Virus record (IMG/VR): IMGVR_UViG_3300032323_001214
Coordinates: 124,001 to 188,000 of that record
Direction: 5' to 3' (one strand)
DNA length: 64,000 bases
Below are positions 7,946 through 15,258 of the stretch, one piece after another (the first letter of the stretch is position 1; every line of letters starts with the position of its first letter). Made by a program: the position numbers and the translations under genes. The notes beneath the pieces are model-generated. The model saw nothing but the letters and a program-made list of their open reading frames with translations, was not told where the DNA came from and made no database searches.

Positions 7946-7969
7946 AATAGGAGTGTACGCTCCTATTTG
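7944..7969. terminator. Hairpin between convergent tmRNA and endonuclease transcripts
   Basis: Perfect 10-bp stem CAAATAGGAG-tgtacg-CTCCTATTTG overlapping the endonuclease stop codon. Confidence 0.55.
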
Positions 7970-8628
7970 TTTGGGTATTCATATGTCCATGTTCCATCAG
8001 GCAAATATTTTCTTTTTCTACCAGTGACCGTCGCTGATTGTTTTCCTGCACTTTTCTTTCCATTCTCAGCCGCAGTTGGATTCGGCAAGCCCTTATTCCA
8101 GGCAGTACGCCCTTTTAATGATTCTCGCAGTTTTAAGTTTGATTTACCCAAAGATTTTTTACCACTACGCACCCCGTTACATTTATGCCCGCATACAAAT
8201 TCTTCTCTTATAGGATGATGACAAAATTCTAATCTAATAAAAACACCATTACAAATGACACATGTATAAGTTCGTTCTTCTTTTGGTTTAGTTTTTGCTT
8301 TTCGATTATATTCAGCTAAATCCTCTCGTTTAGATCCAGACATCGAAAACTTGGACATTGACTTCTGATAATGCCTGTTAAGTAAAAGTGGGTTACCCCA
8401 ATGGTCTTTTATGAGGTTATTTTCAAATTCAAACGCTGATATTTGGTCAACAAAATATGCTAGAATTTCAGAATCATATTCTGAAAAATTGTTTTTAACA
8501 TGCTTAGATGAAGTAAAATAGCAAATACCAAGGTCTTGCTCGGCCACTACTGTATTAGCTGACCTCATTCCTATATAAAATTTTCCTGTCGTGCGATGCT
8601 TCATGATGTAAACATATGGTAAAAACAT
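7963..8628 (-). CDS. Free-standing GIY-YIG (Seg-like) homing endonuclease
   Basis: PYVYIMKHRTTGKFYIGMR..YFTSS..E...I; basic AWNKGLP tail; own ATAAATA promoter (8645-8651, minus strand) and AAGGA Shine-Dalgarno. Confidence 0.85.
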   Translation of the reverse strand: MFLPYVYIMKHRTTGKFYIGMRSANTVVAEQDLGICYFTSSKHVKNNFSEYDSEILAYFVDQISAFEFENNLIKDHWGNPLLLNRHYQKSMSKFSMSGSKREDLAEYNRKAKTKPKEERTYTCVICNGVFIRLEFCHHPIREEFVCGHKCNGVRSGKKSLGKSNLKLRESLKGRTAWNKGLPNPTAAENGKKSAGKQSATVTGRKRKYLPDGTWTYEYPNK

Positions 8629-8709: not shown

Positions 8710-8736
8710 AATAAAGGGCACTAGTTGCCCTTTATT
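8710..8736. terminator. Bidirectional intrinsic terminator
   Basis: AATAAAGGGCA-ctagt-TGCCCTTTATT. Confidence 0.75.
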
Positions 8737-8751
8737 CTTGGTTTCACGCAT

Positions 8752-8769
8752 TTGTCATCGTATTGTCAC
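8752..8769 (+). promoter_or_regulatory. Pho box (PhoB site) upstream of pstS
   Basis: TTGTCAT-cgta-TTGTCAC: two 7-bp repeats at 11-bp spacing matching the CTGTCAT-N4-CTGTCAC consensus; a weaker third half-site GTTTCAC lies at 8741. Confidence 0.8.
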
Positions 8770-8820
8770 AATTCTTGAAGTAAATACTTGTGTAATACTA
8801 ACACACAAGGAGACTATTAC

Positions 8821-9828
8821 ATGAAAAAACTAACAGCACTATTAGGTGCATTGTTAATATCAACTGTTGCATTCAGTGCAGACATAACAGGTGCAGGTGC
8901 TACCTTCCCATTCCCAATCTATGCCAAGTGGGCAGAAGCCTACAAGAAAGAAACTGGCATTGGGCTTAACTATCAATCAATTGGATCATCCGGCGGCATT
9001 CGTCAAATCAATGCTCGCACAGTGACTTTTGGTGCTACAGACGCTCCAGTCAAGGGCGAAGACTTAGACAAGCAGGGACAGGTGCAGTTTCCTGCTATCA
9101 TCGGCGGAACAGTTCCTGTAGTAAACTTAGATGGTTTTAAACCAGGTGAACTACGCATCACTGGACCAGTTATGGCAGAAGTGTTCTTGGGCACGATCAA
9201 TCGTTGGAATGATCCTAAACTAACAGCATTAAATCCTGGCAAAGCATTGCCAAACGCAGAAATCACAGTGGTGCACCGCGCTGATGGAAGTGGTACAACA
9301 TTTAACTGGACAGACTATCTTGCCACAGTCAGCCCCGAATGGTTACAACGTGCAGGTCGTGGTGCTACAATTAAATGGCCAGCTGCTAGTTCAGTAGGCG
9401 GCAAAGGCAACGAAGGTGTTGCTGCCAACGTGGCCAGAATCAAAGGTAGCATCGGTTATGTAGAGTATGCTTATGTTAAGAAAAACAATATGACTTTTCT
9501 ACAAATACAGAACAAAGCAGGTCGTTGGGTCAGTCCAGATGACTTGACATTTGCCGCAGCCGCTGACGGTGCTGATTGGTTCAGTGTTCCAGGTATGGGA
9601 TTGAGCATTGTGGATCAACGCAATCCCAATGCTTGGCCAGTGAGTTCTGCCAGTTTCATCATCATGTACAAGGATCCTGCTGACAAAAAAGCCAGTCAAG
9701 AAGTGTTGAAGTTTTTTGATTGGGCATTCCGCAACGGCAAGAAAGATGCTATTGATTTAGACTATGTACCATTGCCCGATGCATTGACACGCCAGATCCG
9801 TGAACGTGTTTGGACACAGATCAAATAA
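8821..9828 (+). CDS. pstS: Phosphate ABC transporter periplasmic binding protein PstS
   Basis: Signal peptide; ITGAGATFP.PIY.KW, YQSIGSSGGI, FGATDAP, HRADGSGTTF, GKGNEGVA, IGYVEYAY; GGAG Shine-Dalgarno before ATG 8821. Confidence 0.97.
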   Translation: MKKLTALLGALLISTVAFSADITGAGATFPFPIYAKWAEAYKKETGIGLNYQSIGSSGGIRQINARTVTFGATDAPVKGEDLDKQGQVQFPAIIGGTVPVVNLDGFKPGELRITGPVMAEVFLGTINRWNDPKLTALNPGKALPNAEITVVHRADGSGTTFNWTDYLATVSPEWLQRAGRGATIKWPAASSVGGKGNEGVAANVARIKGSIGYVEYAYVKKNNMTFLQIQNKAGRWVSPDDLTFAAAADGADWFSVPGMGLSIVDQRNPNAWPVSSASFIIMYKDPADKKASQEVLKFFDWAFRNGKKDAIDLDYVPLPDALTRQIRERVWTQIK

Positions 9829-9876
9829 ACCGCACACAAGATAGAGTGTGGCTGGAACTCGTAACCAGCATTTTTT
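9829..9876 (+). ncRNA. Two-hairpin element, copy 1, ending in a U-tract (terminator or attenuator)
   Basis: CGCACACAAGATAGAGTGTG-GCTGGAACTCGTAACCAGC-ATTTTTT; near-duplicate at 11520. Confidence 0.5.
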
Positions 9877-9891
9877 AAGGTTGGGAAAATT

Positions 9892-10734
9892 GTGAAAACA
9901 TACCGTTCAATCTTTGTCAGCGATGTTCATCTAGGTACTAAAGACTGCCAAGCGGACAAGTTGAACAATTTTCTCAAACACAACACCTGTGACGCATTGT
10001 ATCTTGTGGGTGATATAATAGATGCTTGGCGCATACAACAAAACAAATGGCGTTGGAAACAAAGTCATACCAATGTTGTTCGTAGGGTGTTGGGTCATGC
10101 TAAACGTGGCACTAAAGTCGTTTATATTGCAGGCAACCACGATGAGTTTTTAAGACCAATGATACCTTATGGTTTTAGTTTTGGTCTAGTAGAAATACAC
10201 AATCAAATAGAACACATAGGTGCTGACGGCAAACACTATCTAGTCACACACGGAGACTTGTTCGACGGTATCACTAGACTAGCACCTTGGCTGGGATTTT
10301 TAGGTGACAAGGCCTACGATTTTATTCTATATATAAACGGTAAGTTCAACTGGATACGGCACAAGATGGGTTTCGGTTATTGGTCATTGAGCAAGTATCT
10401 CAAATATAAAGTAAAAAAAGCAGTTGACTTTATGTTTCAGTTTGAAAAGAATCTTGCTGGCTACTGTAAGAAACGTGGCTTTGATGGAGTCATCTGTGGT
10501 CACATACATCACGCAGAGATTAAAGAGATAGACGGTGTTATGTATATGAATGATGGTGACTGGGTTGAGTCGTGTACTGCACTAGTTGAACACTGGGACG
10601 GACGCTGGGAAATCATAACTTGGACCAAGGAGAGAGATGATGTGGACATTGATACTACTGGCAGTTCACTTAAACGATCCAAAAGACGTGCCGGGACGAG
10701 TGGAACTCTTGTTCCAGGACCGAGCAACGTGTGA
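9892..10734 (+). CDS. plcP: PlcP-like metallophosphoesterase (LpxH2 / UDP-2,3-diacylglucosamine hydrolase-like family)
   Basis: SDVHLG, LVGDIIDAW, GNHDEFLR, HGDLFD, YWSLSK..K.KVKKAV.F...FE, GVICGHIH, NDGDWVESCTALVE; full-length resemblance to PlcP rather than the shorter LpxH. Confidence 0.75.
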   Translation: MKTYRSIFVSDVHLGTKDCQADKLNNFLKHNTCDALYLVGDIIDAWRIQQNKWRWKQSHTNVVRRVLGHAKRGTKVVYIAGNHDEFLRPMIPYGFSFGLVEIHNQIEHIGADGKHYLVTHGDLFDGITRLAPWLGFLGDKAYDFILYINGKFNWIRHKMGFGYWSLSKYLKYKVKKAVDFMFQFEKNLAGYCKKRGFDGVICGHIHHAEIKEIDGVMYMNDGDWVESCTALVEHWDGRWEIITWTKERDDVDIDTTGSSLKRSKRRAGTSGTLVPGPSNV

Positions 10735-10810
10735 ACAAAGTTTACAAACTATGACATATTGGTTAAAGTTTAGTCAATTCAAGATTGAAGGAAAGTGCGT
10801 AAAGAAATGA
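10637..10810 (+). CDS. 57-aa protein overlapping the plcP 3' end (not in the ORF track)
   Basis: AAGGAG Shine-Dalgarno; MMWTLILLAVHLNDPKDVPGRVELLFQDRATCEQSLQTMTYWLKFSQFKIEGKCVKK; ATGA-coupled to the GT2 gene. Confidence 0.65.
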   Translation: MMWTLILLAVHLNDPKDVPGRVELLFQDRATCEQSLQTMTYWLKFSQFKIEGKCVKK

Positions 10811-11517
10811 AACTGAGTGAAAAAATTACCATTGTTGTTCCTTGCAAGAATGAGGAAAACTATATTGCACATTTGCTAATGCATTTACGCCAGCAAAATA
10901 TAGGTGATACTAGAATTATCATCGCTGATTGTTCTACAGACTCAACAAGACAAGTTATACAAAACAACAGTACTGGATTGAATGTTGAAATTATTGAAGG
11001 CGGTCCTGTTAGTATTGCCAAAAACAACGGGGCACGTTTGGTCACTACGCCCTACATCCTGTTTATCGATGCGGACGTTCGCTTCTTTAAGAACACTGTA
11101 ATTCGTGACGCTGTTGACACAATTGAATCAAAGAATTTGGATCTTATCGGATTGAGTATCAAATGTTATGACAAGGACCCGAGAGCCAAGCTTGGGTTTA
11201 TTATTTTCAACACTATAAATCATGCATTAAAGTATTTCTCTCCTTTTGCAGTAGGAGCATTTATGCTGACACGCAGAGATCGGTTTGAAGAATTTGGTGG
11301 GTTTCCCGAAAAGTTTTCAACATCAGAGGATTATTTCTTATCAAAACTGTACAGTCCAAAAAAGTTTAGAATCATCAAACACCACTTTGGGCAAGACAGT
11401 CGCAGATTCAAGAAGATGGGCTACTTTGGCATGGCTCAGTATCTTGTGAAAAATTTTGTAAACCGCAACAACAAAGCCTACTGGGAAAATTTAGATTCCA
11501 CTCGATACTGGAATTAA
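10807..11517 (+). CDS. Family 2 glycosyltransferase
   Basis: ITIVVPCKNEE, IIADCS, NNGARLVTTPYILFIDAD (DxD), FEEFGGF, SEDY, DSRRF. Confidence 0.9.
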   Translation: MKLSEKITIVVPCKNEENYIAHLLMHLRQQNIGDTRIIIADCSTDSTRQVIQNNSTGLNVEIIEGGPVSIAKNNGARLVTTPYILFIDADVRFFKNTVIRDAVDTIESKNLDLIGLSIKCYDKDPRAKLGFIIFNTINHALKYFSPFAVGAFMLTRRDRFEEFGGFPEKFSTSEDYFLSKLYSPKKFRIIKHHFGQDSRRFKKMGYFGMAQYLVKNFVNRNNKAYWENLDSTRYWN

Positions 11518-11519
11518 AA

Positions 11520-11560
11520 TTGCACACAATATAGAGTGTTGCTGAACCTCGTATCCAGTA
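11520..11560 (+). ncRNA. Two-hairpin element, copy 2
   Basis: TTGCACACAATATAGAGTGTTGCTGAACCTCGTATCCAGTA, directly after the GT2 stop codon. Confidence 0.45.
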
Positions 11561-11598
11561 CTAATCCACTGTTAACATAGACACATACATAATTTTGG

Positions 11599-11627
11599 TT
11601 GACATAAATACCATAATATGCTATAAT
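11599..11627 (+). promoter_or_regulatory. Consensus sigma70 early promoter
   Basis: TTGACA-N17-TG-extended TATAAT. Confidence 0.85.
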
Positions 11628-12328: not shown

Positions 12329-13432
12329 ATGGCATCGCCCATCTCTGACAATCTGACAATCACTTCTGTTCAAGTCCGTAAAGCACTATTGACTGCATTC
12401 AAAGCAAAACGTCCCGTATTCTTGTGGGGCCCTCCCGGCATCGGTAAGAGTGAGGTTGTTGCCGAGGTAGCTGAGGAACTTAAAGGTCCTGTAATTGACT
12501 TGCGTATGGCACAGATGGAACCAACTGACATTCGTGGTATCCCTTACTTCAATAAAGATATCAACAAGATGGATTGGGCAGAACCAGTTGACTTGCCAAG
12601 CAAAGAGTTTGCCGCACAATATCCCATTGTTGTTTTGTTCCTTGATGAAATGAACTCAGCACCCCCAGCAGTGCAGGCTGCAGGTTATCAGTTGATTCTG
12701 AACCGTCGTGTTGGTAAGTATGTACTCCCCGATAACGTTGTTATCGTTGCGGCAGGTAATCGTGACAGTGACAAAGGTGTTACATATCGTATGCCGATGC
12801 CCCTCGCTAATCGTTTCGTTCACGTTGAAATGCGAGCCGACTTTGCTTCTTGGCAGAACTGGGCTGTGAACAAAGGCATTCACAAAGACGTTGTTGGCTA
12901 CTTGAGTTTTGCGAAACAAGACTTGTACGACTTTGATAGCAAATCTGCATCACGTGCGTTTGCTACACCTCGTAGCTGGTGCTTTGTGTCTGATTTGTTG
13001 AAGGATGAAGATGATGTTGACACCGACACATTGTTCAACCTCACTGCAGGTGCAGTCGGTGAAGGTCTTGCAGTTAAGTTTGCCGCACACCGAAAAATTG
13101 CAGGTCGTATGCCCGAGCCCTCAGATATTCTGAGTGGTAAAGTCAAGGATCTTGCTGTGAAAGAAATCTCAGCAATGTATTCGTTGACAATTTCTATGTG
13201 CTACGAATTGCGTGATGCACTCGAACACAAGAAAGTGGACAACAAAAAGTTTCACGAAATGGCAGATAACTTCTTCAACTACATCATGGCTAACTTTGAA
13301 ACTGAGTTGGTTGTTATGGGTGCAAAGATTGCATTGAAGACTTACAAACTCCCAATCGAGCCAAGTCAGTTGAAGAACTTTGACGAATTCCATAAGAAGT
13401 ACGGTAAGTACATCGTGGAGGCAGGTAACTGA
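12329..13432 (+). CDS. MoxR-like AAA+ ATPase
   Basis: Walker A GPPGIGKS, DLRMAQMEPTDIRGIP, Walker B LFLDEMN, AAGN, ANRF, ATPRSW. Confidence 0.9.
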   Translation: MASPISDNLTITSVQVRKALLTAFKAKRPVFLWGPPGIGKSEVVAEVAEELKGPVIDLRMAQMEPTDIRGIPYFNKDINKMDWAEPVDLPSKEFAAQYPIVVLFLDEMNSAPPAVQAAGYQLILNRRVGKYVLPDNVVIVAAGNRDSDKGVTYRMPMPLANRFVHVEMRADFASWQNWAVNKGIHKDVVGYLSFAKQDLYDFDSKSASRAFATPRSWCFVSDLLKDEDDVDTDTLFNLTAGAVGEGLAVKFAAHRKIAGRMPEPSDILSGKVKDLAVKEISAMYSLTISMCYELRDALEHKKVDNKKFHEMADNFFNYIMANFETELVVMGAKIALKTYKLPIEPSQLKNFDEFHKKYGKYIVEAGN

Positions 13433-13983: not shown

Positions 13984-15258
13984 ATGAGTGCAGTAATTGA
14001 TAAATCTAAGTCTAAAAAGACACGAAGCGACAAGTTTGAAAAGCTTGTTGGACCCACTGATCCCAAAATTGACTTGCAGGCCCGTGAGCGATTGGTGACC
14101 GCACGTATTGGTCTGTTGTTGCGTCAGTCATTTTTTGGTAATCTCGCTACTCGGCTGACACTAGTAAATGCCGATGAATGGTGTAGTACTGCGGCAACTG
14201 ACGGTTTGAAATTTTATTACAACAGCCGCTTCATTATGATGTTGAAGCCTAAAGAAGTTGAATTCTTAGTTGGTCACGAGGTCCTTCACGTTGTTTACGA
14301 TCACATGGGTCGCCGAGGTACACGTGACCCGCAACTCTTTAACATTGCAAACGATTATGCAGTCAATGCCGATTTGAAGCGACACAAGGTTGGACAATTC
14401 ATTACTACTGTACCTTGCTTGTATGAGCAAAAGTATGATGGCAAATCATCAGAGGAAATTTATGATGACTTGATGAAGAATGTTCAAAAAATTGATATTA
14501 ATTCATTGGTCGACCAAATGATTGACGATCACCTAGACGGTGATGGCGAAGGTGACGGTGAGGGCGATGGTGAAGGCAATGGTAAGCGTCCCAAGATGAG
14601 TCCTGAGGAACGTGAACGTGTTCGGCAAGAAGTTAAGCAAGCAATTATCAATGCCGCACAATCAGCAGAAGCAGGTACTCTACCGCTGGGTGTTGAACGA
14701 CTAATCAAGCAACATGTTAATCCAGTAATGCCCTGGCGTGAACTGATTCAGACTAACTTGACCAGTGCTATTCGCACTGACTTTAGTTGGATGCGTCCAT
14801 CACGTAGGTCTTGGCATATGGATGCTATCATGCCCGGTATGACTCCGGGTGAAGAGATTGACGTGGTTGTTGCAATCGACATGTCAGGCTCTATTTCTAA
14901 TCATCAAGCACAAGCATTCTTGGGTGAGATTGGTGGCATGATGGATAGTTTCGATGGTTACAAGGTCCATGTGTTCTGTTTCGATACTGACACATATAAC
15001 CCGCAAGATTTTACAAGTGAGAATCTTGACTCTATTGATTCATATGAGCCAATGGGCGGTGGCGGTACTGACTTTGATTGTATTTTTGATTATTTGAAGA
15101 AAGTGGGTAATGTGCCCAAGCGGTTGATCTGCTTCACTGACGGTTACCCTTGTGGTTCTTGGGGTGATGCTGATTACTGTGACACTACATGGATCATTCA
15201 TGGTGACCCTAATCCGAATCCCCCGTTCGGTACTTATGCACTGTATGATGAAAAGTGA
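13984..15258 (+). CDS. Metallopeptidase-like domain plus VWA domain (DUF2201-like), MoxR partner
   Basis: TAATDG, HEVLH zincin motif, FNIANDYAVN, GDGE linker, VAIDMSGSI MIDAS, GGGGTDF, FTDGYP. Confidence 0.88.
   Translation: MSAVIDKSKSKKTRSDKFEKLVGPTDPKIDLQARERLVTARIGLLLRQSFFGNLATRLTLVNADEWCSTAATDGLKFYYNSRFIMMLKPKEVEFLVGHEVLHVVYDHMGRRGTRDPQLFNIANDYAVNADLKRHKVGQFITTVPCLYEQKYDGKSSEEIYDDLMKNVQKIDINSLVDQMIDDHLDGDGEGDGEGDGEGNGKRPKMSPEERERVRQEVKQAIINAAQSAEAGTLPLGVERLIKQHVNPVMPWRELIQTNLTSAIRTDFSWMRPSRRSWHMDAIMPGMTPGEEIDVVVAIDMSGSISNHQAQAFLGEIGGMMDSFDGYKVHVFCFDTDTYNPQDFTSENLDSIDSYEPMGGGGTDFDCIFDYLKKVGNVPKRLICFTDGYPCGSWGDADYCDTTWIIHGDPNPNPPFGTYALYDEK

What the first reader, a model, noticed from the sequence alone, without database searches (positions are those of the whole stretch)
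8741..11517. Pho-box-controlled pstS, plcP-like and glycosyltransferase module: candidate phage-driven lipid remodelling
Seen: a Pho box precedes pstS, followed by a metallophosphoesterase, a 57-aa ORF and a GT2. Known: cyanophage pstS can be switched on by host PhoB through a Pho box. In Sinorhizobium and marine heterotrophs, PhoB-regulated PlcP (often annotated LpxH2-like) strips phospholipids to diacylglycerol, which glycosyltransferases convert to phosphorus-free glycolipids. Inference: the phage both imports phosphate and mines the host membrane for it while back-filling with glycolipid. The usual PlcP partner Agt is GT4, so a GT2 partner is unusual.
Basis: partly seen in the sequence, partly recalled or inferred. 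Interest (0 to 1): 0.85.

Follow-up and report, generated by a model that had tools for sequence, protein, structure and literature searches.

The report
Phage phosphate-starvation lipid-remodelling gene cassette
A 250-kb freshwater-type jumbo phage carries a cassette that looks switched on by host phosphate starvation: a phosphate-binding protein, a PlcP-type phospholipase, a previously unnoticed 56-residue overlapping gene and a glycosyltransferase, so it probably strips phosphorus from host membrane lipids and refills the membrane with sugar lipids.

Summary
A Pho box of three 11-bp-spaced TGTCAY repeats plus a TAAATA -10 precedes pstS. Then come a metallophosphoesterase (MPE), a short overlapping ORF and a GT2.

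- **MPE:** it belongs with PlcP, not LpxH. It is 53-55% identical to proteins of bacterial plcP-agt operons and 23% identical to E. coli LpxH. It fails both LpxH equivalog cut-offs.
- **Distribution:** more than 600 IMG/VR contigs carry this MPE, many of them 200-520 kb.
- **GT slot:** in 84 loci the position after the MPE holds either this GT2 (60 loci) or an Agt-like GT4 (22 loci).
- **MPE-GT2 pairing:** it persists in distant phages, down to 34% GT2 identity, in both gene orders.
- **Regulation:** the direct-repeat motif occurs 95 times in 883 kb of related loci, against about 3 expected. Every copy lies at or beside the module, and all 17 distinct pstS promoters have it.
- **Short ORF:** it is a real overprinted gene, open in 61 of 61 variants, with a coding-type codon pattern and a confident predicted fold. 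It has no known relatives.

No biochemistry was tested, and the GT2 acceptor is inferred from gene context only. I found no paper describing phage-encoded PlcP. I rate this a new variant of a known pathway, of high interest.

The parts
8710..8736 (.). Bidirectional terminator-like hairpin (11-bp stem, T-runs on both sides) that insulates the cassette from the upstream minus-strand homing-endonuclease gene
   Evidence: sequence. Equivalent GC-rich hairpins precede the Pho box in relatives.
8741..8769 (+). Pho box: three direct repeats with an 11-bp period (GTTTCAC, TTGTCAT, TTGTCAC) in the -35 position
   Evidence: Conserved upstream of all 17 distinct pstS promoters, and in 34 of 52 distinct MPE promoters of related phages.
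8781..8786 (+). TAAATA -10 element, 11 nt after the last Pho-box repeat
   Evidence: Read from the sequence. The same TAAATA follows the repeats in nearly all related pstS and MPE promoters.
8821..9828 (+). pstS: periplasmic phosphate-binding protein with an N-terminal Sec-type signal peptide and no lipobox
   Evidence: NCBIfam PstS equivalogs at 385.6 bits (cut-off 339) and 362.4 bits (cut-off 205); PBP_like_2; PHROG 'phosphate transporter subunit' at 3e-61.
9832..9876 (+). 3' element of pstS: two short hairpins (CACAC/GTGTG and GCTGG/CCAGC) followed by a T-run. Probably a weak terminator or attenuator between pstS and the MPE gene
   Evidence: fold -14.8 kcal/mol, z -1.6. It follows pstS in 12 of 16 occurrences in related loci.
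9892..10734 (+). PlcP-family metallophosphoesterase (280 aa, GTG start). All metal-binding motifs are intact (D11, H13, D41, N82-H83, H120, H204, H206). It ends 14 codons early relative to 293-294-aa relatives because of a CGA-to-TGA change
10640..10810 (+). Overprinted small gene (56 aa from the conserved Met-Trp start; 57 aa from the ATG at 10637). It lies out of frame over the MPE tail, and its TGA stop overlaps the GT2 ATG
10807..11517 (+). GT2 (GT-A fold) glycosyltransferase, 236 aa, with a DAD motif and no transmembrane segment. Candidate diacylglycerol glycosyltransferase
   Evidence: Gene-pair conservation with the MPE. Positional alternation with GT4.
11522..11558 (+). Second, degenerate copy of the pstS 3' element, so the MPE-small ORF-GT2 unit is bracketed by direct repeats
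   Evidence: (2 matches against 0.00 expected).
11599..11627 (+). Perfect sigma-70-type promoter (TTGACA, 17 nt, TATAAT, with TG) that starts the next transcription unit and marks the 3' border of the cassette

Best explanation
The cassette is a phage-borne, Pho-regulon-controlled unit for phosphate acquisition and membrane-lipid renovation.

Proposed mechanism, with the basis for each step:
1. In a phosphate-starved Gram-negative host, phosphorylated host PhoB binds the three TGTCAY repeats that replace the -35 element and recruits RNA polymerase to the TAAATA -10. This is inferred from the promoter anatomy and its conservation.
2. The transcript covers pstS and reads through a weak hairpin into plcP, the small ORF and GT2. 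The last two are translationally coupled through an ATGA overlap. Read-through is inferred; the overlap is seen in the sequence.
3. PstS is exported and feeds the host PstCAB importer. Family membership is shown; the pairing with the host transporter is inferred.
4. The PlcP-type Mn-metallophosphoesterase cleaves the phosphorylated head group from host phospholipids (PE, PG), leaving diacylglycerol and releasing phosphorus for replication of a ~250-kb genome. Orthology is shown; the activity is inferred from characterised PlcPs.
5. The GT2 glycosylates the diacylglycerol from a nucleotide sugar, so the membrane stays intact until lysis. This is the job done by the Agt-type GT4 in bacteria and in sister phages. 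It is inferred from gene-pair conservation and from positional replacement by GT4.
6. The 56-aa beta-beta-alpha-beta protein is a phage-specific accessory factor of this pathway, with an unknown role.
For: **PlcP identity**
- The 80 closest hits in bacterial genomes are 48-60% identical. In 66 of them a GT4 follows directly, which is the published plcP-agt arrangement (PMC4796936; PMC8528852).
- The window MPE is 53-55% identical to the Pseudomonas, Mesorhizobium, Pelagibacter, Caulobacter and Aquitalea members. Those are 47-68% identical to each other. E. coli LpxH is 23% identical.
- In the tree all 62 phage MPEs form one clade (SH-aLRT 96) beside the bacterial plcP-agt set, and LpxH sits on a branch of length ~10.
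- LpxH equivalog models score 45 and 34 bits against cut-offs of 134 and 190. PDB LpxH chains score only 25 bits.
- The metal ligands are invariant.

**GT coupling**
- In 84 related phage loci the slot after the MPE and small ORF holds GT2 in 60 and GT4 in 22. The two partners are intermixed on the MPE tree.
- The phage GT4 is 38-46% identical to the GT4 at the agt position in bacteria.
- GT2 relatives at 34-46% identity lie next to, or overlap, a Metallophos gene in phage contexts.
- Of 80 further IMG/VR GT2 loci, 76 have the MPE adjacent, in either order.

**Regulation**
-. The same repeat-plus-TAAATA promoter drives pstS in 17 of 17 distinct promoters and the MPE operon in 34 of 52.

**Phage origin**
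- The window encodes a large terminase, a tail sheath and virion proteins. It is part of a 249.6-kb IMG/VR contig.
Against: - No activity, binding or expression data exist.
- The GT2 acceptor cannot be read from sequence or fold. The nearest solved structures are wall-teichoic-acid, polyprenyl-phosphate and oligosaccharide transferases: TarS, PcManGT, WrtF and TarP.
- None of the 80 closest bacterial plcP loci has this GT2, so no characterised precedent exists for this exact pair.
- In this window the MPE has no Pho box of its own. A hairpin with a T-run lies between pstS and the MPE gene, so co-induction is assumed.
- Many relatives use TGTAAY rather than TGTCAY half-sites. Another OmpR-family regulator could in principle bind them.
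- In the window alone the Pho-box match is not statistically significant.
- No characterised PlcP sequence (S. meliloti, MED193, PAO1) could be placed in the tree. Orthology rests on synteny and on identity levels.
Confidence: 0.68

Rival explanations
1. Envelope remodelling for a purpose other than phosphorus economy. The PlcP-GT pair changes membrane or surface lipid composition to block superinfection, alter receptor display or prepare lysis. Phosphate starvation serves only as the host-state cue.
For: Lipid remodelling changes phage attachment and predator susceptibility in bacteria (abstracts of PMC9938194 and PMC9457565, seen). One distant GT2-MPE pair lies near a T4 Imm-like superinfection-immunity gene. 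The cassette sits among moron-like genes beside a homing endonuclease.
Against: The cassette is tightly linked and co-regulated with pstS, whose only known role is phosphate capture. The enzymatic steps would be the same as in the main explanation, so this rival concerns the selective benefit and not the mechanism.
Confidence: 0.15
2. The GT2 does not act on diacylglycerol. The MPE and GT2 act on another phosphorylated or nucleotide-linked envelope precursor, such as a lipid A, polyprenyl-phosphate or wall-polymer intermediate, or the GT2 glycosylates a different acceptor while the PlcP works alone.
For: The nearest structures and models for the GT2 are TarS, TarP, PcManGT and WrtF, plus a weak N-terminal GtrB-like PHROG hit. 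The best NCBIfam hit is an arsenosugar-type GT far below its cut-off. Pelagibacter phage Mosig and Synechococcus phage S-SRM01 carry the MPE without any adjacent GT.
Against: An Agt-like GT4 takes exactly the same slot in sister phages. The MPE-GT2 pair is kept in both gene orders over deep divergence. The GT2 has no transmembrane segments of the GtrB or DPMS kind (sequence). The MPE is clearly not LpxH.
Confidence: 0.12
3. The direct-repeat operator is not a PhoB site. It is bound by another OmpR-family response regulator or by a phage factor, so the cassette is not phosphate-controlled.
For: Most relatives have TGTAAY half-sites (27 of 34 MPE promoters that carry the motif). From memory, these resemble sites of other OmpR-family regulators such as CpxR (GTAAA-N5-GTAAA). 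The host and its PhoB are unknown.
Against: The window and several relatives have canonical TGTCAY repeats in the same position. Both variants occur in front of pstS, the archetypal Pho-regulon gene. The motif is confined to this module rather than spread across phage promoters. Bacterial plcP operons are reported to have Pho boxes (PMC4796936, PMC8528852).
Confidence: 0.05

Closest known systems
PlcP-Agt lipid-renovation pathway of bacteria (S. meliloti SMc00171; Phaeobacter sp. MED193 MED193_17359; SAR11 HTCC7211 PB7211_983/PB7211_960; P. aeruginosa PA3219/PA3218)
   Same: The same MPE family: 48-60% identity to proteins in plcP-agt operons, which matches the spread within the family. A glycosyltransferase lies directly downstream, and the promoter is of Pho-box type. 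Sister phages even carry the Agt-like GT4 (PMC4796936; PMC8528852).
   Different: It is encoded by a jumbo phage. In this window the partner is a 236-aa GT-A/GT2 enzyme rather than a GT-B/GT4. A 56-aa gene overprinted on the MPE 3' end lies between the two. pstS is fused into the same unit.
LpxH (UDP-2,3-diacylglucosamine diphosphatase), the name public annotations give these phage proteins
   Same: Calcineurin-like metallophosphoesterase with the same metal-binding motifs. LpxH chains are the only hits in the solved-structure search.
   Different: Only 22-28% identity. Scores of 45 and 34 bits fall far below the equivalog cut-offs of 134 and 190. The tree branch to LpxH has length ~10. The gene context is plcP-type, not lipid A-type.
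Host-PhoB-controlled pstS and phoA of cyanophages (Zeng and Chisholm 2012, from memory)
   Same: A phage pstS behind a Pho box, so a phage auxiliary gene is plugged into the host phosphate-starvation regulon.
   Different: Here the regulon is extended to a membrane-lipid pathway. The half-sites are proteobacterial TGTCAY/TGTAAY, not the cyanobacterial type. The host is probably a heterotrophic Gram-negative bacterium.
Pgt, the processive GT21 glycolipid synthase of Mesorhizobium loti, and other non-Agt GTs found next to plcP (types 3 and 5 in PMC4796936)
   Same: A precedent for plcP paired with a GT other than Agt. The window GT2 also touches Pfam Glyco_transf_21 (28.1 bits against a cut-off of 21.7).
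   Different: The much stronger match is to generic PF00535 (69.9 bits). From memory, Pgt is larger, but no Pgt sequence was available here to compare. Membership was not established.
Pelagibacter phage Mosig EXVC030M (MT647606.1) and Synechococcus phage S-SRM01 'UDP-2,3-diacylglucosamine hydrolase' genes
   Same: These are the only cultured-phage relatives, at 49.6% and 34% identity. In Mosig the gene sits back to back with pstS and is followed by an overlapping small ORF.
   Different: Neither has an adjacent glycosyltransferase. The Mosig small ORF shows no sequence similarity to the 56-aa protein. The genome announcement does not mention lipid or phosphate.

Membership tests
PlcP (Mn-dependent metallophosphoesterase phospholipase C of lipid renovation) | Calcineurin-like phosphoesterase domain with a complete set of metal ligands | tested here: met
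   PF00149 at 38.5 bits against a cut-off of 21.5. D11, H13, D41, N82, H83, H120, H204 and H206 are invariant in alignment A1.
PlcP (Mn-dependent metallophosphoesterase phospholipase C of lipid renovation) | Groups with proteins of plcP-agt operons and apart from LpxH | tested here: met
   66 of the 80 closest genome hits have a GT4 directly downstream. Identity is 53-55% to those proteins and 23% to E. coli LpxH. See also the tree. Caveat: no experimentally characterised PlcP sequence was in the tree.
PlcP (Mn-dependent metallophosphoesterase phospholipase C of lipid renovation) | Pho-box-controlled expression | tested here: inconclusive
   In the window the Pho box lies in front of pstS, and a weak hairpin lies before the MPE gene. 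In 34 of 52 distinct relatives' promoters the motif lies directly upstream of the MPE gene. Binding and induction could not be tested.
PlcP (Mn-dependent metallophosphoesterase phospholipase C of lipid renovation) | Hydrolyses PE, PG or PC to diacylglycerol plus the phosphorylated head group | not testable with these tools
   Needs an enzyme assay or lipidomics.
LpxH (UDP-2,3-diacylglucosamine diphosphatase) | Reaches the NCBIfam equivalog cut-offs (NF003743, TIGR01854) | tested here: not met
   45.3 bits against 134, and 33.7 bits against 190. PDB LpxH chains reach only E 8e-5 and 25 bits, over the N-terminal half.
Agt (GT4 diacylglycerol glucosyl/glucuronosyl transferase) | GT-B fold, GT4 family (Glycos_transf_1 and Glyco_transf_4 domains) | tested here: not met
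   The window enzyme is PF00535 GT2 with a confident GT-A model, pLDDT 95.3. Sister phages do carry a GT4 in the same slot.
Pgt-type GT21 glycolipid synthase | Best described by the Glyco_transf_21 model and similar in architecture to Pgt | tested here: inconclusive
   PF13506 scores 28.1 bits (cut-off 21.7) over residues 81-193 only, while PF00535 scores 69.9 bits. No Pgt reference sequence was available.
PstS (phosphate ABC transporter substrate-binding protein) | Reaches the equivalog cut-offs and has an export signal | tested here: met
   NF008171 at 385.6 bits against 339; TIGR00975 at 362.4 bits against 205. A hydrophobic N-terminal signal is visible in the translation.
Pho box (PhoB operator) | Two or more 7-nt TGTCAY-type direct repeats with an 11-bp period in place of the -35 element, about 10 bp upstream of a -10 | tested here: met
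   Three repeats at 8741-8769, with TAAATA at 8781-8786. Conserved in relatives. The consensus CTGTCATNNNNCTGTCAT is quoted in PMC8528852.
Pho box (PhoB operator) | Bound by phosphorylated PhoB, with transcription induced by phosphate limitation | not testable with these tools
   Needs an EMSA, a reporter assay or transcriptomics. The host is unknown.

The most novel reading that the evidence does not exclude
A very large clade of jumbo phages, and more distant T4-like phages, runs its own PhoB-triggered lipid-renovation programme built from parts bacteria do not use together. These are a PlcP, a phage-specific GT2 glycolipid synthase interchangeable with Agt, and a new 56-aa protein created by overprinting the PlcP 3' end. 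On this reading the host phospholipid pool is a significant phosphorus source for building 250-500-kb genomes, and the genes move as Pho-box cassettes bounded by a short repeated element.
Probability: 0.4. Interest if true: 0.85.

Novelty: new variant of a known kind. Interest (0 to 1): 0.74.

Why it matters
**Significance for phosphorus-limited waters**
- Phosphorus limits phage production in many waters.
- The known phage responses are uptake (pstS) and ester hydrolysis (phoA).
- A phage-encoded PlcP-GT pathway would add a third route: mining the host's own membrane while keeping it intact.
- It would also mean that viruses contribute to the phospholipid-to-glycolipid shift used as a marker of P stress in natural communities.

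**Scale**
- More than 8000 protein clusters match the MPE at E ≤ 1e-10 (the cap of that search, so the set also includes bacterial PlcPs). More than 600 IMG/VR contigs carry close relatives, so the effect could be ecologically relevant.
- From general knowledge, an E. coli-sized cell holds roughly 2×10^7 phospholipids. That is about the phosphorus content of some 40 genomes of 250 kb. This is my own estimate, not a computed result.

**What else it offers**
- A candidate new family of GT2 diacylglycerol glycosyltransferases.
- A clean example of a gene born by overprinting.
- Evidence that the current public annotation of these genes as LpxH is misleading.

Tried and rejected
- **DNA search of the cassette against 50,697 phage records.** It found only short 72-73% patches, so there is no close cultured relative.
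- **Small ORF against the overlapping 72-aa ORF of phage Mosig.** No similarity.
- **Family searches for the small ORF.** Pfam, NCBIfam and PHROGs gave nothing. Foldseek against the PDB gave nothing significant; the best hit was PurS at E 0.19. Its role stays unknown.
- **The small ORF as a chance ORF or a frameshifted MPE tail.** Rejected. It is open in 61 of 61 variants, while the MPE stop wanders between 261 and 296 codons.
- **Acceptor specificity of the GT2 from PDB sequence and fold searches.** Only generic GT-A relatives turned up.
- **LpxH function.** Rejected.
- **GtrB-like O-antigen conversion.** Only a 26-bit N-terminal hit, and the protein has no transmembrane helices.
- **Closest bacterial hits without a GT4 (Hyphomonas, Methylotenera).** Their neighbours are HNH and helicase genes or small unknown ORFs, possibly phage-derived, and are uninformative.
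- **The 215-aa ORF that also carries a Pho box in relatives.** It has no family match.
- **Literature.** Five searches combining PlcP or lpxH with phage terms, plus a look inside two papers, found no report of phage-encoded PlcP.
- **Reference sequences and host.** I could not obtain a characterised PlcP, Agt or Pgt sequence, and I could not identify the host.


Full report
**1. What is in the window**

Positions 8710-11627 form one insulated plus-strand unit.
- A bidirectional terminator hairpin at 8710-8736.
- Three direct repeats with an 11-bp period: GTTTCAC at 8741, TTGTCAT at 8752 and TTGTCAC at 8763.
- A TAAATA -10 at 8781-8786, an AAGGAG ribosome-binding site, then pstS (ATG 8821 to 9828).
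- A 63-nt spacer with two small hairpins and a T-run.
- A metallophosphoesterase gene (MPE; GTG 9892 to 10734).
- A short ORF (10637/10640 to 10810) that overlaps the MPE 3' end in another frame.
- A GT2 gene whose ATG (10807) overlaps the short ORF's TGA stop.
- A perfect sigma-70-type promoter at 11599-11627 for the next gene.

The window belongs to a phage. It encodes a large terminase, virion proteins, a tail sheath and a DnaB-type helicase. It is part of the 249.6-kb contig IMGVR_UViG_3300032323_001214.

**2. The genes**

- **pstS.** It passes both NCBIfam PstS equivalog cut-offs. It starts with a Sec-type signal peptide without a lipobox, which fits a Gram-negative host.
- **MPE.** It matches Pfam Metallophos and keeps every metal ligand. 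Public pipelines call its relatives LpxH, but it misses the LpxH equivalog cut-offs by a wide margin: 45 bits against 134, and 34 against 190. Solved LpxH structures match at only 25 bits.
- **GT2.** It matches PF00535. The model is a confident GT-A fold with pLDDT 95.3. It has the DAD motif and no transmembrane segment.

**3. The MPE belongs to the PlcP family**

- One scan of 185,579 species-representative genomes returned 80 best hits, all 48-60% identical. They come from Alpha-, Beta- and Gammaproteobacteria, including Pseudomonas, Mesorhizobium, Caulobacter and Pelagibacter.
- In 66 of the 80, a GT4 lies immediately downstream. This is the plcP-agt arrangement described by Sebastian et al. 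2016 (PMC4796936) and by Jones et al. 2021 for PA3219/PA3218 (PMC8528852).
- The window protein is as close to these proteins (53-55%) as they are to one another (47-68%). E. coli LpxH is 22-28% identical to all of them.
- In a maximum-likelihood tree the 62 distinct phage proteins form one clade (SH-aLRT 96) next to the bacterial plcP-agt set, and LpxH sits on a very long branch.
- Limitation: none of the experimentally characterised PlcPs was among the sequences I could fetch. Orthology rests on synteny and on identity levels that match the published ones (47% and 46% for PA3219 against the MED193 and S. meliloti PlcPs; PMC8528852).

**4. The glycosyltransferase slot**

- More than 8000 protein clusters match the MPE at E ≤ 1e-10, the cap of that search. 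The 120 best listed are 82-91% identical. More than 600 IMG/VR contigs carry close relatives, many of them 200-520 kb.
- In 84 fetched loci the MPE is followed by GT2 in 60 and by a GT4 in 22. In both cases the GT start overlaps the stop of the short ORF.
- The phage GT4 is 38-46% identical to the bacterial GT4 at the agt position. Its best NCBIfam neighbours are membrane-lipid GT4 enzymes.
- GT2- and GT4-bearing phages are interleaved on the MPE tree, so the partner has been exchanged repeatedly.
- Independently, GT2 relatives at only 34-46% identity lie next to, or overlap, a Metallophos gene in clearly phage-like contexts. The MPE tested there is 45% identical to the window's.
- Of 80 further IMG/VR loci retrieved with one such GT2, 76 have the MPE adjacent, either as MPE-GT2 or as GT2-MPE.
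- A gene pair that survives this much divergence and an inversion of order, and whose second member is replaceable by Agt, is strong contextual evidence that the GT2 works on the PlcP product.
- None of the 80 bacterial loci has this GT2, so among the loci examined the pairing was seen only in phage-like contigs.
- The acceptor cannot be deduced from structure. The nearest PDB folds are TarS, PcManGT, WrtF and TarP.

**5. Regulation**

- In the window alone, one exact TGTCAYN5TGTCAY match against 0.19 expected proves little.
- Across 883 kb of related loci, the motif TGT[AC]A[CT]N5TGT[AC]A[CT] occurs 95 times, against 0-7 in shuffles. Of these, 56 lie within 90 nt upstream of the MPE gene and 25 within 110 nt upstream of pstS. 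The other 14 lie on the same strand beside the module.
- All 17 distinct pstS promoters have it, with either TGTCAY or TGTAAY half-sites followed by TAAATA. So do 34 of 52 distinct MPE promoters in phages without an upstream pstS.
- The motif is therefore specific to this module and is not a general phage promoter. It links the lipid genes to the archetypal Pho-regulon gene.
- In this window the MPE gene has no box of its own, so it must be reached by read-through of the weak hairpin after pstS. That step is inferred.

**6. The short ORF is a real, overprinted gene**

- Its frame is open in all 61 distinct variants, while both other frames contain stops in all 61.
- Mean pairwise amino-acid identity is 0.61 in its frame and 0.38 in the MPE frame.
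- Variability by codon position is 0.81, 0.51 and 1.09, a coding pattern.
- The MPE stop meanwhile wanders between codons 261 and 296. In this window it comes 14 codons early through a CGA-to-TGA change. The MPE tail is therefore the unconstrained frame.
- Eleven positions are invariant, including two cysteines.
- AlphaFold gives a confident beta-beta-alpha-beta fold, pLDDT 92.9, with no significant structural neighbour.
- The large protein database holds 536 clusters of it. All those listed (the best 120) lack a Pfam domain, and any name they carry is 'hypothetical protein'.
- It is absent from the bacterial plcP loci. Several closely related phages also lack it, with the GT2 following the MPE directly.
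- It is therefore a dispensable accessory protein found so far only in phage-like contigs. Its role is unknown.

**7. Comparison with what is known, and novelty**

- The mechanism matches the bacterial PlcP-Agt lipid-renovation pathway and the cyanophage habit of placing pstS under host PhoB control.
- The differences are the viral carrier, the GT2 partner, the overprinted gene and the fusion with pstS.
- Sebastian et al. already list plcP next to other glycosyltransferases, one of them the processive Pgt. A non-Agt partner therefore has a precedent, although I could not test membership of the window GT2 in that family.
- Five literature searches, and a look inside two papers, found no paper that describes phage-encoded PlcP.
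- The only cultured relatives, phages Mosig and S-SRM01, annotate the gene as an LpxH-type hydrolase and have no adjacent GT.
- I rate it a new variant of a known kind.

**8. Verdict**

| Claim | My confidence |
|---|---|
| The MPE is a PlcP-family enzyme | about 0.9 |
| The cassette is under Pho-type control | about 0.8 |
| The GT2 makes a diacylglycerol glycolipid | about 0.6 |
| The whole model | 0.68 |

Noticed in passing
window 9832-9870 and 11522-11558: A ~40-nt element (GCACACAA.ATAGAGTGT.GCTG...CCAG, two small hairpins) occurs exactly twice in the window: right after pstS and right after the GT2 (0.00 expected). The MPE-small ORF-GT2 unit is therefore bracketed by direct repeats. In relatives the element mostly follows pstS (12 of 16). 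It may mark cassette borders or act as an RNA 3' element.
   Followed up: partly
L045:7709-8356 and L022:5198-5845: A 215-aa ORF with no Pfam, NCBIfam or PHROG match carries its own Pho-box-type promoter next to the module in several relatives. It is a candidate further member of the phage phosphate-starvation set.
   Followed up: partly
relatives, 110 nt upstream of the MPE start (for example L018, L024, L057): In MPE promoters the TAAATA -10 ends only about 4-10 nt before the ATG, and no Shine-Dalgarno sequence is visible. This suggests leaderless or near-leaderless mRNAs. The pstS promoters have a ~30-nt leader with AAGGAG.
   Followed up: no
window 7963-8628 (minus strand): A homing-endonuclease-like gene (PHROG 314) lies immediately upstream of the cassette. 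This fits a recombination-prone moron region.
   Followed up: no
window 12329-13432 and 13984-15258: A MoxR/CobS-like AAA ATPase and a large protein with an HExxH motif and a VWA-like C-terminal region (PHROGs 1297 and 1314) lie just downstream. This conserved pair has an unclear role in large phages.
   Followed up: no
L226:1579-2469 (also L229): A RimK-like ATP-grasp gene is inserted between the MPE and the GT2 in some relatives.
   Followed up: partly
L003:1859-3203; L045:8489-10612: Contigs of 350-380 kb that carry the module also encode curli secretion components CsgF and CsgG, or an amino-acid-type solute-binding protein plus a sodium:dicarboxylate symporter. This is an unusual cargo for phages.
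   Followed up: no
L001:4900-5000 (Pelagibacter phage Mosig): The spacer between the divergent pstS and MPE genes holds TTTAAC/CTTAAC repeats 11 bp apart and a TAAATA just before the MPE ATG. This may be an AT-rich Pho-box equivalent. A 72-aa ORF overlaps the MPE 3' end there too, but it is unrelated in sequence to the 56-aa protein.
   Followed up: partly
L097:2874-4976 (Methylotenera MAG, 670-kb contig): The bacterial hit that branches next to the phage MPE clade sits among small ORFs with no family matches and has no GT4. It may be a prophage or a phage-derived island, and it could hint at a methylotroph host.
   Followed up: partly
L178-L257 (for example L178, L181, L209) and the P0183 contig: More distant phages have the reverse order, GT2 then MPE, with overlapping stop and start codons. 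One of these pairs lies near a T4 Imm-like superinfection-immunity gene.
   Followed up: partly
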